Positions 1,105-7,934 of a DNA stretch of 12,032 nt are shown here, piece after piece (position 1 is the stretch's first letter; every line of letters begins with the position of its first letter). The stretch spans positions 1 to 12,032 of the forward strand of contig NW_021826754.1 in NCBI RefSeq assembly GCF_006345805.1, given 5' to 3'. A program made the translations under genes and the position numbers. A model generated the notes under the pieces. That model saw only the letters and a program-made list of their open reading frames with translations. It did not search any database and was not told the origin of the DNA. The stretch is from Octopus sinensis. Taxonomy: Eukaryota.

Positions 1105-1203
1105 CATACACACACGCGCACACACTCACATATAGAATCACACACATTTTGTATATACATGCACACACATATATATATATATATACATATAAATATGTAT
1201 GTC

Positions 1204-1241
<38 letters not shown>

Positions 1242-1278
1242 CACACATATATATATATATACATATATATACATACCT

Positions 1279-1323
<45 letters not shown>

Positions 1324-1332
1324 CATATACAT
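1105..1332. repeat. compound (CA)n/(TA)n microsatellite
   Basis: Alternating CACA, TATA and TATG runs are directly visible. Confidence 0.95.
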
Positions 1333-3117: not shown

Positions 3118-3148
<31 letters not shown>

Positions 3149-3280
3149 TGTATGTATGTATGTATGTATGTATGTATGTATGTATGTATGTATGTACCAA
3201 TCTATCAATCTCTCTCTCTCTATCTCTCTCTGTATATATATATATATATATAATTATATGTATGTGTGTATGTATATGTA
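3113..3280. repeat. (TATG)n tetranucleotide array plus (CT)n and (TA)n
   Basis: About 19 perfect TATG units at 3119-3196, then CT and TA runs. Confidence 0.97.
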
Positions 3281-4420: not shown

Positions 4421-4615
4421 ATGATATCTATTATTTGTTATGGCTTTGGTAGGAATTTAAATTGCGTCATCCTTGCCTTATATTGTTCCACTAGAAGCAG
4501 AGATCGAAATAATCTTCAGTATGTTTAGAACAAAGAATAAGGCGAAATGGTGTAAAGAAGACTCCGTGCGGTGTCCAATATGGCTTCGTAATAAGTCAGT
4601 CTCTAACCAACAAAT

Positions 4616-4821
4616 CATCATCATTGTTCGACCGTGGTCGGGACAATGGAATTTACCATGCTACGCCAGACTTCACGGTCCATCATGGCATTACGGAGGT
4701 CCTGTTGCTGGATGCCTGTATCCCTGGAGATCACATCAGGGTAGGAGAGCGTGCGCCCTCTGTTATTGCGAGTAGATGGCTTCCAGAAGAGAAGAGTAGA
4801 TATTGCCTCGTTTTTAGCTCT
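4616..4821 (-). mobile_element. 5'-truncated RTE-clade LINE, 3' end with (TGA)n tail
   Basis: The minus frame reads RAKNEAISTLLFWKPSTRNNRGRTLSYPDVISRDTGIQQQDLRNAMMDREVWRSMVNSIVPTTVEQ*, matching the RTE ORF C-terminal pattern (W.P....RGR...D.I..D...A.DR..WR). The tail is ATGATGATGAT. A perfect 10-bp TSD ACCAACAAAT lies at 4606-4615 and 4822-4831. Confidence 0.9.
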
Positions 4822-4965
4822 ACCAACAAATATGCGAACAATTAATTCGGTTTTCGCGCAATTTGCGTGATTGAGTTTATATTAACAATATTTGAATTAA
4901 GCCCTGATAATCTTTCAGATGTTCTGTGTTCGAGAAGGAAATTTTATTCGCTACTGATGGGCAGT

Positions 4966-5283
4966 GTGGAGGTGCAATGGCCCAGTGGTTAGGACAGCGG
5001 ACTCGCGGTCGGAGGATCGCGGTTTCGATTCTCAGACCGGGCGTTGTGTTTCTTGAGCGAAAACACCCAAAAGTTCCACGGGGCTCCGGCAGGGTCTGGT
5101 GGCGACCCATGTATACTCTTTCGCACCAACTTTCTTTCGAACTTTCTTCCTGTTTCTTGAGTAACGCTGCGATGGACTGGCGTCCCGTCCAGCTGGAGGG
5201 AACACATGCGCCACAGAAACCGGGAAATCGGGCCAATGGGCCTGGCTAGGCTTGTAGAGGGCGCCTAAATAAATAAATAAAAA
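4966..5283 (+). mobile_element. tRNA-derived SINE, family A (full length)
   Basis: A box TGGCCCAGTGGTTAGG (4978-4993) and B box GGTTTCGATTCTC (from 5021). The central block CTGCGATGGACTGGCGTCCCGTCCAG resembles the Meta/V-SINE conserved block (recall, unverified). Ends in a (TAAA)n tail. A 14-bp TSD with 2 mismatches: TACTGATGGGCAGT (4952-4965) / TACTAATGAGCAGT (5284-5297). Confidence 0.88.
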
Positions 5284-5320
5284 TACTAATGAGCAGTATA
5301 TATACTCACCACACAGCTAC

Positions 5321-5852
5321 GTGCAGGCGTGGCTAAGTGGTAAGAAGTTTGCTTCCTAGTCACATGAATTTCGGTTCAGTGCCACAGCGTGGCACATTGA
5401 GTAGGGTTCTTCTGCGACCAAAGACTTATGAATGGATTTCGGGGAAGGAAACTCAAAGGTCTGGCGTGTATGTGTCTGTGTGTGTTAATGTGTTTGTTGG
5501 TATGTGCGTGGGTGTATATGTGTGTGAATGTATGTCTGTGAGTGTGTGCGTGTGGGTATCTACGTGTCTTTGTGTCAGTATTTACCTCCCCTCACTCCTT
5601 GACATTCGATGTTGGCGGGTTTACTTCCCTGTAACGACAGTTTGTTAAAAAAGACTGAGTGAATAATTTACCAGGTTATCAAAATAAAATAAAATAAAAT
5701 AAAATAAAATAAATAAATAATAAATCTCTAAAAAGGGTGAAAATAAAAATAGAAGTAAAAGGAAAGTATTAATGTCGATTCTTTTGAATAAAATTCTTTA
5801 AGGCGGTGCCGCAGCATGACCGCAGTCTAATGACTTGAACAAGTAAAAGATA
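5321..5852 (+). mobile_element. tRNA-derived SINE, family B (older copy)
   Basis: Head GTGCAGGCGTGGCTAAGTGGTAAG and B box GGTTCAGTGCC (5373-5383). Contains a decayed internal TG tract, an (AAAAT)n expansion at about 5682-5725, and the 3' block AAGGCGGTGCCGCAGCATGACCGCAG. Possible 6-bp TSD AGCTAC (5315-5320 / 5855-5860). Confidence 0.8.
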
Positions 5853-6752: not shown

Positions 6753-6826
6753 GATACATTTGGTAGTAGTAGCAGTAGTAGCAATAGGGTGTGAAACACA
6801 TTTATTTGACACATGGTAAAAATAAC

Positions 6827-7092
6827 GTGGTCGAAGCAATGGAATTTACCATGCTACGCCAGACTTCACGGTCCATCATAGCATTACGGAGGTCCTGTTA
6901 CTGGATGCCTATATCCTTGGAGATTACATCAGGGTAGGAGAGTGTGCGCCCTCTGGTATTGCGAGTAGATGGCTTCCAGAGGAGAAGAGTAGAAATTGCC
7001 TGGTTTTCAGCTCTACAACAATGTCCAGCTAACTGGACTCTCCTACCTTTCACAAGAGATGACACAGGTCGAGCAATGATGATGATGATGAT
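6827..7092. mobile_element. RTE-clade LINE 3' fragment with inverted body (body on minus, tail on plus)
   Basis: 6827-7066 on the minus strand encodes PVSSLVKGRRVQLAGHCCRAENQAISTLLLWKPSTRNTRGRTLSYPDVISKDIGIQ*QDLRNAMMDREVWRSMVNSIAST, with about 14 mismatches over about 190 nt versus 4634-4823 (manual count). 7067-7092 is the element's last GGTCGAGCAA plus the (TGA)n tail in plus orientation. TSD GTAAAAATAAC lies at 6816-6826 and 7093-7103. Confidence 0.9.
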
Positions 7093-7934
7093 GTAAAAAT
7101 AACCAAGATGGCATTTCATGACAAACCATTCATATTCGCAGTCCAAATTTCATGGATGTCAGCAGCAAAGTGTGTGTAGTCTGGGAAATTTTCTCTATAA
7201 AATGTACGACCATTTTGACATTTTTTTGTTGTTGGCATTATGTTTATACTATATGACTGTCTGGCAGAGAAATGTTCGTTATTTTAATATTTTACTCCGC
7301 TCTGTATCCCTCTCAATGATGGGCATGTATCCCCCAGACATTTTTGTTAGACATGCTCATTTAATAAACGAGTCATCATTAACAAAGTAATTTTGATTAA
7401 TTAGCATTTCTCTGCTTACTTCATCAAGTATACGACAGTCCACATTATTGCTAATGACTTTAGCTGTCTAAAACAACTTGATCCGCATCAGAAATGCGAT
7501 CTTACAACACTTATGACATTTTCTATTATTTTCATTTCATAAACTTTAACCGAACATCGCGCTGATATTTGACCTCGGATATAAAATCTAGTATGATAGC
7601 TTGCAGCGTTGATGTAATTGAATCGAAATACCAAAAAAAAAATAATAATAATAGTAGTATGGAATCAAATATTATGAGAGAATTTTATTCATCCAATTTT
7701 CTTTGCTTAGGCCAATTCCAAATCGTAACTAAGACACTGAATGTGAAATTCCTGTAAACGTTAACCAAAATTTGAAATTTAAATTACTTCCAGCGTCATA
7801 AAAAAAATATATTCAATTGAAAAATGAAATTCAATTTAAATCTTAATTTTCTCAGGAGAAAATTATTCACCTTAGTTATTAACTTTACATGGGCATTAGT
7901 GGATAATTGTATAAGACTAATAGAAATCAATCAA

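What the first reader, a model, noticed from the sequence alone, without database searches (positions are those of the whole stretch)
6816..7103. RTE LINE insertion inverted exactly in the loop of its own 3' hairpin (twin-priming-like)
Seen: a perfect TSD GTAAAAATAAC brackets the insert. Inside it, 240 nt lie on the minus strand and end at ...TCGACCAC, while the last 26 nt (GGTCGAGCAA + TGA tail) lie on the plus strand. Rejoining the two pieces gives TCGAC-CACG-GTCGA with no gain or loss, as in the intact sibling at 4616-4641. The break therefore sits within the CACG loop of a terminal stem-loop. Established: the layout TSD-[inverted 5' part]-[3' part + tail]-TSD is the twin-priming signature described for mammalian L1. 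Inference: the forward piece is very short, and the target end has only about 1 nt of complementarity at the internal priming point. This suggests a structure-directed route, such as RNA nicking or RT stalling at the recognition hairpin followed by second-strand priming, rather than ordinary microhomology-driven twin priming. I am not aware of this being described for RTE elements.
Basis: partly seen in the sequence, partly recalled or inferred. Interest (0 to 1): 0.82.

Follow-up and report, generated by a model that had tools for sequence, protein, structure and literature searches.

The report
Inverted RTE retrotransposon insertion (twin priming)
A short, dead copy of an RTE-type jumping gene was inserted with most of its body flipped; the flip point lies in the loop of the element's conserved terminal RNA hairpin, which fits the known "twin priming" accident, and one case cannot show that the hairpin caused it.

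Summary
An 11-bp perfect target-site duplication (6816-6826 and 7093-7103) brackets 240 nt of RTE 3' coding sequence on the minus strand, followed by 10 nt plus a (TGA)n tail on the plus strand. Rejoined, the two pieces restore the family's 3' end with no base gained or lost.

The element is an RTE-like LINE. A related full-length copy has one ORF with an APE endonuclease and a reverse transcriptase, and its stop codon is the first TGA of the tail. The terminal hairpin is real. It is present in 10 of 12 3' ends examined and is weakened by one stem mismatch in each of the other two. It is also conserved at synonymous sites. The break lies in its 4-nt loop.

The layout meets every testable criterion of twin priming. 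This includes short microhomologies at all three junctions (1, 1 and an inferred 2-3 nt).

The claim of a special hairpin-directed route is not supported. There is only one event. The ordinary tail priming of this same insertion also shows only 1 nt of complementarity. L1 already offers precedents for very short forward pieces and for loop-located twin priming. The source genome could not be reached, so recurrence was not tested. I rate this a new member of a known kind, of modest interest.

The parts
6816..6826 (+). 5' copy of the target-site duplication, GTAAAAATAAC. Its last C (6826) could also be the complement of loop base G, giving 1 nt of microhomology at the internal priming point.
   Evidence: In one search the blastn alignment of the rejoined element runs 1 nt into the TSD.
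6827..7066 (-). Inverted 5' segment of the insertion: 240 nt of RTE 3' coding sequence, sense on the minus strand. It reads ...VSSLVKGRRVQLAGHCCRAENQAISTLLLWKPSTRNTRGRTLSYPDVISKDIGIQ*QDLRNAMMDREVWRSMVNSIASTT. It ends next to the TSD with the 5' arm of the hairpin plus loop bases CAC (plus strand GTGGTCGAAGCAATGG).
   Evidence: In one search, tblastn aligns it to residues 961-1042 of the L001 ORF at 65% identity.
7067..7076 (+). Non-inverted 3' segment GGTCGAGCAA: the last loop base plus the 3' arm of the hairpin. GG, or GGT (7067-7069), is probably microhomology shared with the 5' end of the inverted segment, since the close relatives read ...ACCACC|TGT at that point.
7077..7093 (+). (TGA)n microsatellite tail. 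Its first TGA is the ORF stop codon in intact relatives.
7093..7103 (+). 3' copy of the target-site duplication, GTAAAAATAAC. G7093 is shared with the tail.
4614..4829 (-). Sibling copy of the same family. It is 5'-truncated and not inverted, with an intact terminal hairpin and tail (TTGTTCGACCGTGGTCGGGACAA at 4624-4646 on the plus strand; tail at 4614-4623).

Best explanation
This is a single, dead, 5'-truncated insertion of an RTE-clade LINE, made by target-primed reverse transcription with twin priming.

The proposed sequence of events:
1. The element's endonuclease nicked the bottom strand at ACATG|GTAAAAATAAC. That 3' end primed cDNA synthesis on the (UGA)n tail.
2. The top strand was nicked 11 bp downstream. 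Its 3' end (...ATAAC) primed a second cDNA on the same RNA, starting in the 4-nt loop of the terminal hairpin only 10 nt upstream of the tail. This cDNA ran about 240 nt towards the 5' end of the RNA.
3. The first cDNA could copy only the 3' arm (GGUCGAGCAA) before it met the second primer.
4. The two cDNA 3' ends were joined through 2-3 nt of microhomology (CC/GG, or ACC/GGT).

The result is TSD-[inverted 240 nt]-[10 nt + tail]-TSD with no base lost.

Shown here: the layout, the TSD, the element's identity, the hairpin and the break position. Inferred: the order of events, and the idea that the loop was used because it is the nearest unpaired RNA to the tethered 3' end. With one event, coincidence remains possible.
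For: - TSD: a perfect 11-bp duplication, found twice where 0.02 copies are expected. Its length falls on the RTE-clade peak of 10-12 bp (PMC4245944, PMC6007223).
- Geometry: the inverted segment abuts the 5' TSD with its 3'-most base. The forward segment plus tail abuts the 3' TSD. The two segments are contiguous in the source sequence.
- Element identity: the relative L001 has one 1044-aa ORF with Exo_endo_phos and RVT_1 domains, and the stop codon is the first TGA of the tail. There are 337 relatives with the same C-terminus.
- Hairpin: the inner stem TCGAC/GTCGA with a 4-nt loop is intact in 10 of 12 3' ends. The window sibling (CCGAC) and L007 (TCGAG) each carry one stem mismatch. The hairpin lies right beside the tail. 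It is the minimum-free-energy fold in all 8 sequences folded, with z-scores from -1.3 to -3.2. Four-fold degenerate third codon positions are invariant at 3 of 4 sites in the hairpin against 1 of 14 upstream (p = 0.019).
- Microhomology: 1 nt at the 5' junction, 1 nt at the 3' junction, and 2-3 nt inferred at the inversion junction. This is the pattern described for 5'-inverted L1 (PMC2912911).
- Precedents: twin priming with very short non-inverted parts (PMC2837659) and with breakpoints in single-stranded loops (PMC4476161, PMC13174262).
Against: - There is one event only.
- No empty allele and no reads were available, so the insertion and the assembly are not independently confirmed.
- The 2-3 nt microhomology at the inversion junction is inferred from relatives (L002, L003 and others), not from this family's own consensus.
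- In cell-culture assays 5' inversions were found almost only with human L1 in human cells (PMC4245944), so twin priming by a non-L1 LINE is not well documented.
- A priming point only 10 nt from the tail requires the first reverse transcriptase to have barely started or to have stalled. The classical model does not explain that by itself.
Confidence: 0.75

Rival explanations
1. Hairpin-directed inversion. The template RNA was cut in the hairpin loop, or the first reverse transcriptase stalled there. The 3' fragment was copied to its end from the bottom-strand primer. The top-strand 3' end then started on the very 3' end of the 5' fragment by template jumping, with no base pairing needed. If so, the loop breakpoint would be a recurrent property of this RTE family.
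For: - The break is exactly in the 4-nt loop.
- Nothing is gained or lost.
- There is only 1 nt of complementarity at the internal priming point.
- The hairpin is the one conserved RNA structure of the element and is presumably bound by the reverse transcriptase (PMC6007223).
- L1 chimeras with tRNA halves cut in the anticodon loop, in antisense orientation, are a precedent for loop-cleaved RNAs being used in twin priming (PMC13174262).
Against: - There is only one event, and the feature was picked out after the fact.
- The ordinary 3' junction of the same insertion also has only 1 nt of complementarity, so low complementarity is normal for this element.
- An exact rejoin is equally expected from a collision of the two reverse transcriptases on an intact RNA.
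- No second example appeared in the few loci that could be read (10 related loci, one copy each).
Confidence: 0.15
2. Rearrangement after or during integration at the DNA level. A normal insertion, or its double-stranded intermediate, was broken at the short palindrome TCGACC..GGTCGA and at the 5' junction. The released 240-bp fragment was then religated in reverse by end joining.
For: The break coincides with the centre of a near-palindrome in the DNA, TCGACCACGGTCGA.
Against: - It needs two breaks, one exactly at the TSD/element boundary, and two ligations with no loss.
- Arms of 5-6 bp are too short to extrude a cruciform.
- No inverted repeats link the two breakpoints.
- Twin priming explains the same structure in one step.
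Confidence: 0.04
3. Two independent insertions side by side, or an assembly or read chimera.
For: No spanning reads or second assembly of the locus could be obtained.
Against: - The minus-strand piece lacks its own last 10 nt and its own tail, which target-primed reverse transcription (TPRT) does not produce.
- The 10-nt plus-strand piece supplies exactly the missing bases.
- A single perfect TSD brackets both pieces.
- A chimera would not place its junctions exactly at a TSD boundary.
Confidence: 0.03

Closest known systems
Twin priming / 5'-inverted insertions of mammalian LINE-1 (Ostertag and Kazazian 2001; junction analysis in PMC2912911)
   Same: The layout is TSD-[inverted upstream segment]-[non-inverted 3' segment + tail]-TSD. 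The two segments are contiguous in the source RNA. There are short microhomologies at the 5' junction and at the inversion junction. The TSD has the full length typical of the clade.
   Different: The element belongs to the RTE clade: a single ORF, a microsatellite (TGA)n tail and a 3' hairpin. It sits in an invertebrate-like, microsatellite-rich genome. The non-inverted part is only 10 nt plus the tail. The inversion point has neither a deletion nor a duplication.
[quoted passage not shown] 2010, PMC2837659)
   Same: The first-strand cDNA barely left the tail, or never did, and almost the whole insert comes from the top-strand-primed cDNA.
   Different: In those 39 primate loci the forward part is the poly(A) tail alone and an internal deletion is usual. 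Here the forward part is the tail plus exactly the 3' arm of a hairpin, and nothing is deleted.
Antisense U5 snRNA/L1 and tRNA-half/L1 chimeras attributed to twin priming (PMC4476161, PMC13174262)
   Same: The internal priming points or breakpoints fall in a single-stranded loop of a structured RNA.
   Different: Those cases involve a second, cellular RNA captured in trans by L1. Here the structured RNA is the LINE's own 3' end, copied in cis.
Conserved 3'-terminal hairpins of RTE-clade LINEs and their SINE partners (Nishiyama and Ohshima 2018, PMC6007223), and the stringent-type LINE 3' stem-loops
   Same: A short hairpin lies immediately upstream of a microsatellite-like tail and is conserved across diverged family members.
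   Different: Here the hairpin lies inside the last codons of the ORF (S-T-x-V-E-Q). Its inner stem is invariant rather than covarying, and its role in recognition has not been tested.

Membership tests
RTE-clade LINE | A single ORF encoding an APE-type endonuclease followed by a reverse transcriptase | tested here: met
   The window copies hold only the last ~80 codons. The relative L001, 64-67% identical to them in protein, has one 1044-aa ORF with Exo_endo_phos at 101-317 and RVT_1 at 607-836. It matches L1 ORF2p and R2 structures.
RTE-clade LINE | [quoted passage not shown] | tested here: met
   The stop codon is the first TGA of the (TGA)n tail in both window copies and in L001-L005 and L008-L010. 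In L006 and L007 the ORF likewise stops at a TGA just after the hairpin. PMC9115989 describes the same feature for an octopus RTE.
RTE-clade LINE | Target-site duplications that peak at 10-12 bp | tested here: met
   The TSD here is 11 bp. The clade peak is taken from PMC4245944 and PMC6007223.
RTE-clade LINE | Phylogenetic placement of the reverse-transcriptase domain inside the RTE clade | not tested
   No reference RTE sequences were at hand. One lead only: a weak hit, P0136, has a C-terminus that I recall as Bov-B-like.
Twin-primed (5'-inverted) LINE insertion | One TSD brackets both segments | tested here: met
Twin-primed (5'-inverted) LINE insertion | The inverted segment abuts the 5' TSD with its 3'-most base, and the non-inverted 3' segment plus tail abuts the 3' TSD | tested here: met
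Twin-primed (5'-inverted) LINE insertion | The two segments are adjacent in the source element, give or take a small deletion or duplication | tested here: met
   The rejoin has 0 nt gained or lost when compared with the sibling and ten related 3' ends.
Twin-primed (5'-inverted) LINE insertion | Short microhomologies at the 5' junction and at the inversion junction | tested here: inconclusive
   There is 1 nt at the 5' junction. The 2-3 nt (GG or GGT) at the inversion junction is inferred from the conserved Pro codon and from ...ACCACC in L002 and L003.
Twin-primed (5'-inverted) LINE insertion | An empty site with a single copy of the TSD exists | not testable with these tools
   The source genome is not in any reachable collection.
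LINE 3' recognition stem-loop (stringent type) | A stem-loop next to the tail, conserved across diverged members | tested here: met
   The inner stem is intact in 10 of 12 3' ends, and the other two (window sibling and L007) carry one stem mismatch each. The loop sequence varies: CACG, CTCG, TACG, CAAG, TGCG, CGCG. Synonymous sites are frozen in the stem.
LINE 3' recognition stem-loop (stringent type) | Covariation supports the base pairing | tested here: inconclusive
   88.9% of cells are paired, but 4 of 9 pairs never vary and only one compensatory change (C-G to U-A) was found. That is no better than the shuffles (147 of 500).
LINE 3' recognition stem-loop (stringent type) | The stem-loop is required for retrotransposition or for binding by the reverse transcriptase | not testable with these tools
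   This needs a retrotransposition or binding assay.

The most novel reading that the evidence does not exclude
In this RTE lineage the terminal recognition hairpin is a hotspot for the second (top-strand) priming event. The cause would be either cleavage of the bound RNA or a pause of the first reverse transcriptase at the loop. Under this reading, 5'-inverted copies recurrently break in the loop. That would be a structure-directed form of twin priming in a stringent-type LINE, and it would report on how the RTE ribonucleoprotein holds its RNA at the target site.
Probability: 0.12. Interest if true: 0.6.

Novelty: new member of a known kind. Interest (0 to 1): 0.3.

Why it matters
Twin priming has been documented almost only for mammalian L1. 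In cell-culture assays other LINEs gave essentially no 5' inversions (PMC4245944). A clean, TSD-flanked example in an RTE-clade element shows that a LINE which recognises a 3' hairpin can also start a second cDNA from the top-strand nick before the first cDNA has gone far.

If a genome-wide survey found such inversions clustered at the hairpin loop, the insertions themselves would map where the RNA is exposed or cut in the integration complex. This single locus is a neat textbook-style case and not a new mechanism.

Tried and rejected
**Reaching the source genome, for more copies, an empty site or a second assembly**
- A word-indexed protein search with the 66-aa sibling peptide found nothing.
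- An exact 26-mer scan of metagenome contigs and genome contigs found nothing.
- An exact look-up of ten window ORFs, including those spanning the junctions, found none in the collection.
- A degenerate hairpin+tail pattern found nothing in viral contigs or genome contigs.
- Cluster look-ups gave no organism names.
- The octopus RTE paper's supplements do not contain this sequence.

**Looking for a second inverted copy**
- tblastn of the full ORF against all fetched loci showed one ordinary copy per locus.
- Screening the C-termini of 267 related proteins for ORFs that diverge right after the loop codon gave no candidate.

**Other checks that led nowhere**
- Rfam and ARAGORN on the window gave only low-complexity sub-threshold hits and no tRNA.
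- Ostertag and Kazazian 2001 and Ichiyanagi and Okada 2008 are not held in the paper library.

**Explanations rejected**
- Two independent insertions: the minus-strand piece has no tail, and its missing bases are exactly the plus-strand piece.
- Recombination between inverted repeats: there are none at the breakpoints.
- Snap-back of the cDNA 3' end: the pivot would then be at the 5' truncation point, not at the hairpin.

Full report
**1. The observation**

- GTAAAAATAAC lies at 6816-6826 and again at 7093-7103. These are its only two occurrences in the window. Shuffled sequence gives 0.02 on average and never 2.
- 6827-7066 (240 nt) is the reverse complement of a coding 3' region.
- 7067-7076 is GGTCGAGCAA, and 7077-7093 is a pure (TGA)n run, both on the plus strand.
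- Turning the 240 nt round and joining them to the last 27 nt gives ...AATTCCATTGCTTCGACCAC|GGTCGAGCAATGATGATG.
- The second copy in the window lies on the minus strand at 4614-4829 and is 5'-truncated. It reads ...AATTCCATTGTCCCGACCACGGTCGAACAATGATGAT and is 92.6% identical over 216 nt.

The two pieces fit with no base gained or lost. G7093 can belong to either the tail or the TSD, and C6826 can belong to either the TSD or the element. The TSD is therefore 10-11 bp, and the 3' and 5' junctions each carry 1 nt of ambiguity.

**2. What the element is**

The rejoined copy reads ...RGRTLSYPDVISKDIGIQ*QDLRNAMMDREVWRSMVNSIASTTVEQ in one frame, followed directly by TGA TGA TGA.

A back-translated scan of JGI metagenome contigs found one relative, L001.
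- It has a single 1044-aa ORF.
- It has an APE-type endonuclease domain (Exo_endo_phos, residues 101-317) and a reverse transcriptase (RVT_1, residues 607-836).
- It resembles L1 ORF2p and R2 proteins among solved structures.
- It ends ...AMMDREVWHSYVEAIVSTSVEQ, with the first TGA of a (TGA)n tail as its stop codon.

A full HMMER scan found 172 proteins carrying this C-terminal module. A word-indexed search with the last 200 residues of L001 found 337. Nearly all come from marine metagenome assemblies, one of them a TARA Oceans scaffold. The closest, P0208/L002, is 88% identical in protein and 88.8% in DNA to the inverted copy.

The features that fit the RTE clade are these:
- a single endonuclease-reverse transcriptase ORF;
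- an 11-bp TSD, on the clade peak of 10-12 bp (PMC4245944, PMC6007223).

I did not build a tree, so clade membership is consistent but not proven. The host was not identified. The window is rich in microsatellites and carries tRNA-like SINE sequences. That made me think of a cephalopod or another mollusc, but this is a guess.

**3. The hairpin**

I collected twelve 3' ends: two from the window and ten from other sources (L001-L010). Ten of the twelve have the same architecture immediately before the tail: CCATTG-Y-N-TCGAC-NNNG-GTCGA-ACAA-(TGA)n. The window sibling (CCGAC) and the decayed L007 (TCGAG) each have one mismatch in the inner stem. The outer part also differs in L005-L007 and L010.

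- Folding: the minimum-free-energy fold of all eight sequences folded is one hairpin with a 4-nt loop. The stem has about 11 pairs, with a 1-nt bulge in most sequences. Energies range from -10 to -15 kcal/mol and z-scores from -1.3 to -3.2. The 3' strand of the stem runs into the first TG of the tail.
- Loop: the sequence varies (CACG, CTCG, TACG, CAAG, TGCG, CGCG) while the inner stem does not.
- Covariation: it is weak. One compensatory change (C-G in the inverted window copy against U-A elsewhere) was found, which is no better than the shuffles.
- Synonymous sites: the hairpin lies in the codons S-T-x-V-E-Q. Four-fold degenerate third positions are invariant at 3 of 4 sites there against 1 of 14 in the 100 nt upstream (one-sided Fisher p = 0.019). 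The sequences are related, so this is a rough figure.

The hairpin is therefore a conserved, nucleotide-level feature. This agrees with the conserved 3' hairpins reported for other RTE lineages (PMC6007223). The break in the inverted copy lies between CAC and G of its loop. The forward piece is exactly the last loop base, the 3' arm and the tail.

**4. Mechanism**

The geometry matches twin priming.
- The bottom-strand nick lies at the left edge of the TSD. It primes on the tail and gives the forward piece.
- The top-strand nick lies 11 bp to the right. It leaves ...GTAAAAATAAC-3', and the sequence that follows it (GTGGTCGAAGC...) is the cDNA of the RNA read from the loop towards its 5' end.
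- In twin priming the first cDNA stops where the second primer sits. Two segments that are contiguous in the source are therefore expected.

The other end of the inverted segment joins the forward piece at ...GACACA|GGTCGAG.
- tblastn carries the coding alignment 2 nt further, into a Pro codon.
- That Pro is conserved in the relatives.
- The closest relatives, L002 and L003, read ...ACCACC|TGT at that point.

So GG, or GGT, at 7067-7069 is probably microhomology between the two cDNA ends. This is the usual way such junctions are resolved in L1 (PMC2912911).

All three junctions thus carry short microhomology (1 nt, 1 nt, and 2-3 nt inferred). In particular, the ordinary tail priming of this insertion has no more complementarity than the internal priming.

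**5. Is the loop position meaningful?**

Under uniform priming along an RNA of about 3.2 kb, hitting a 4-nt loop has a chance of about 0.1%. However, the feature was singled out after the fact, and uniform priming is not a realistic null model.

A priming point 10 nt from the tail does need the first reverse transcriptase to have been slow or blocked. The loop is the nearest unpaired RNA to a 3' end that is tethered 11 bp from the second nick.

Precedents exist for both elements of the story:
- L1 twin priming in which the forward part is little more than the tail (39 primate loci, PMC2837659);
- twin-primed U5 snRNA chimeras all truncated in the same single-stranded loop (PMC4476161);
- antisense tRNA/L1 chimeras whose breakpoints match anticodon-loop cleavage sites (PMC13174262).

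One locus cannot separate it from the classical model.

I could not test recurrence. The source genome is not in any collection I can search. The ten related loci hold one ordinary copy each.

**6. Rivals**

- Two independent insertions are excluded in practice. The minus-strand piece lacks a tail, and its missing 10 nt are exactly the plus-strand piece.
- A DNA-level inversion needs two precise breaks and two ligations without loss, and no repeats link the breakpoints.
- An assembly chimera would not place its junctions at a TSD boundary. Without reads, though, this cannot be formally excluded.

**7. Verdict**

The RTE identity, the hairpin and the twin-priming layout are supported. The claim of a special hairpin-directed mechanism is not supported.

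In the searchable literature I found no description of twin priming for an RTE-clade element, and 5' inversions outside L1 are reported as rare (PMC4245944). This is therefore a new member of a known kind. Interest is modest at 0.3. It would rise only if a genome-wide survey showed clustering at the loop.

Noticed in passing
window 4600-4614 and 4818-4830 (minus strand): The sibling copy's TSD is TTTGTTGGTTAGAG at the 3' side and TTTGTTGGT-AGAG at the 5' side. It overlaps the element's own sequence at the truncation point (TTGTTG-TAGAG in the other copy). The 5' copy looks like a mosaic of target and element. This suggests 5' truncation by annealing of the 11-13-nt top-strand overhang to the cDNA, which would be an unusually long microhomology.
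   Followed up: partly
window ~4960-5285 and ~5325-5720 (plus strand): Two adjacent SINE-like elements. By eye both have tRNA-like A and B boxes (GGCCCAGTGGTTAGG...GGTTTCGATTC, and GGCTAAGTGGTAAG...GGTTCAGTGCC). They end in (TAAA)n and (AAAAT)n respectively. ARAGORN and Rfam do not call them tRNAs.
   Followed up: no
window 8495-8714: Two tandem copies of a ~121-nt unit, 78% identical (AACTGGTG.TTATTT.ATCGAC...GGAATTTGAACT.AGAAC). It is possibly part of another repeat family.
   Followed up: no
window 1150-1330, 2297-2636, 3119-3196, 10546-10939, 11253-11492: Very long (TA)n, (TATG)n and (TATC)60 microsatellites. They produce many Rfam miRNA hits (mir-297, mir-466 and others), all far below the gathering score and best treated as low-complexity artefacts.
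   Followed up: yes
L004 583-2908: In this metagenome contig the (TGA)n tail of the RTE relative is followed within a few bases by another LINE ORF of 783 or more aa, only 27% identical to L001. This points to nested or head-to-tail LINE insertions.
   Followed up: no
P0001, P0002, P0004, P0016, P0024, P0139, P0141, P0176, P0219 and others: Many database proteins of this family continue past ...VEQ with runs of W. The gene caller read the (TGA)n tail as tryptophan, which inflates the ORFs. This also shows that the TGA tail is widespread in the lineage.
   Followed up: partly
L003 ~565-615: This ENA contig ends in a Nextera adapter sequence (CTGTCTCTTATACACATCT...) right after the RTE tail. Adapter read-through was assembled into the contig.
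   Followed up: no
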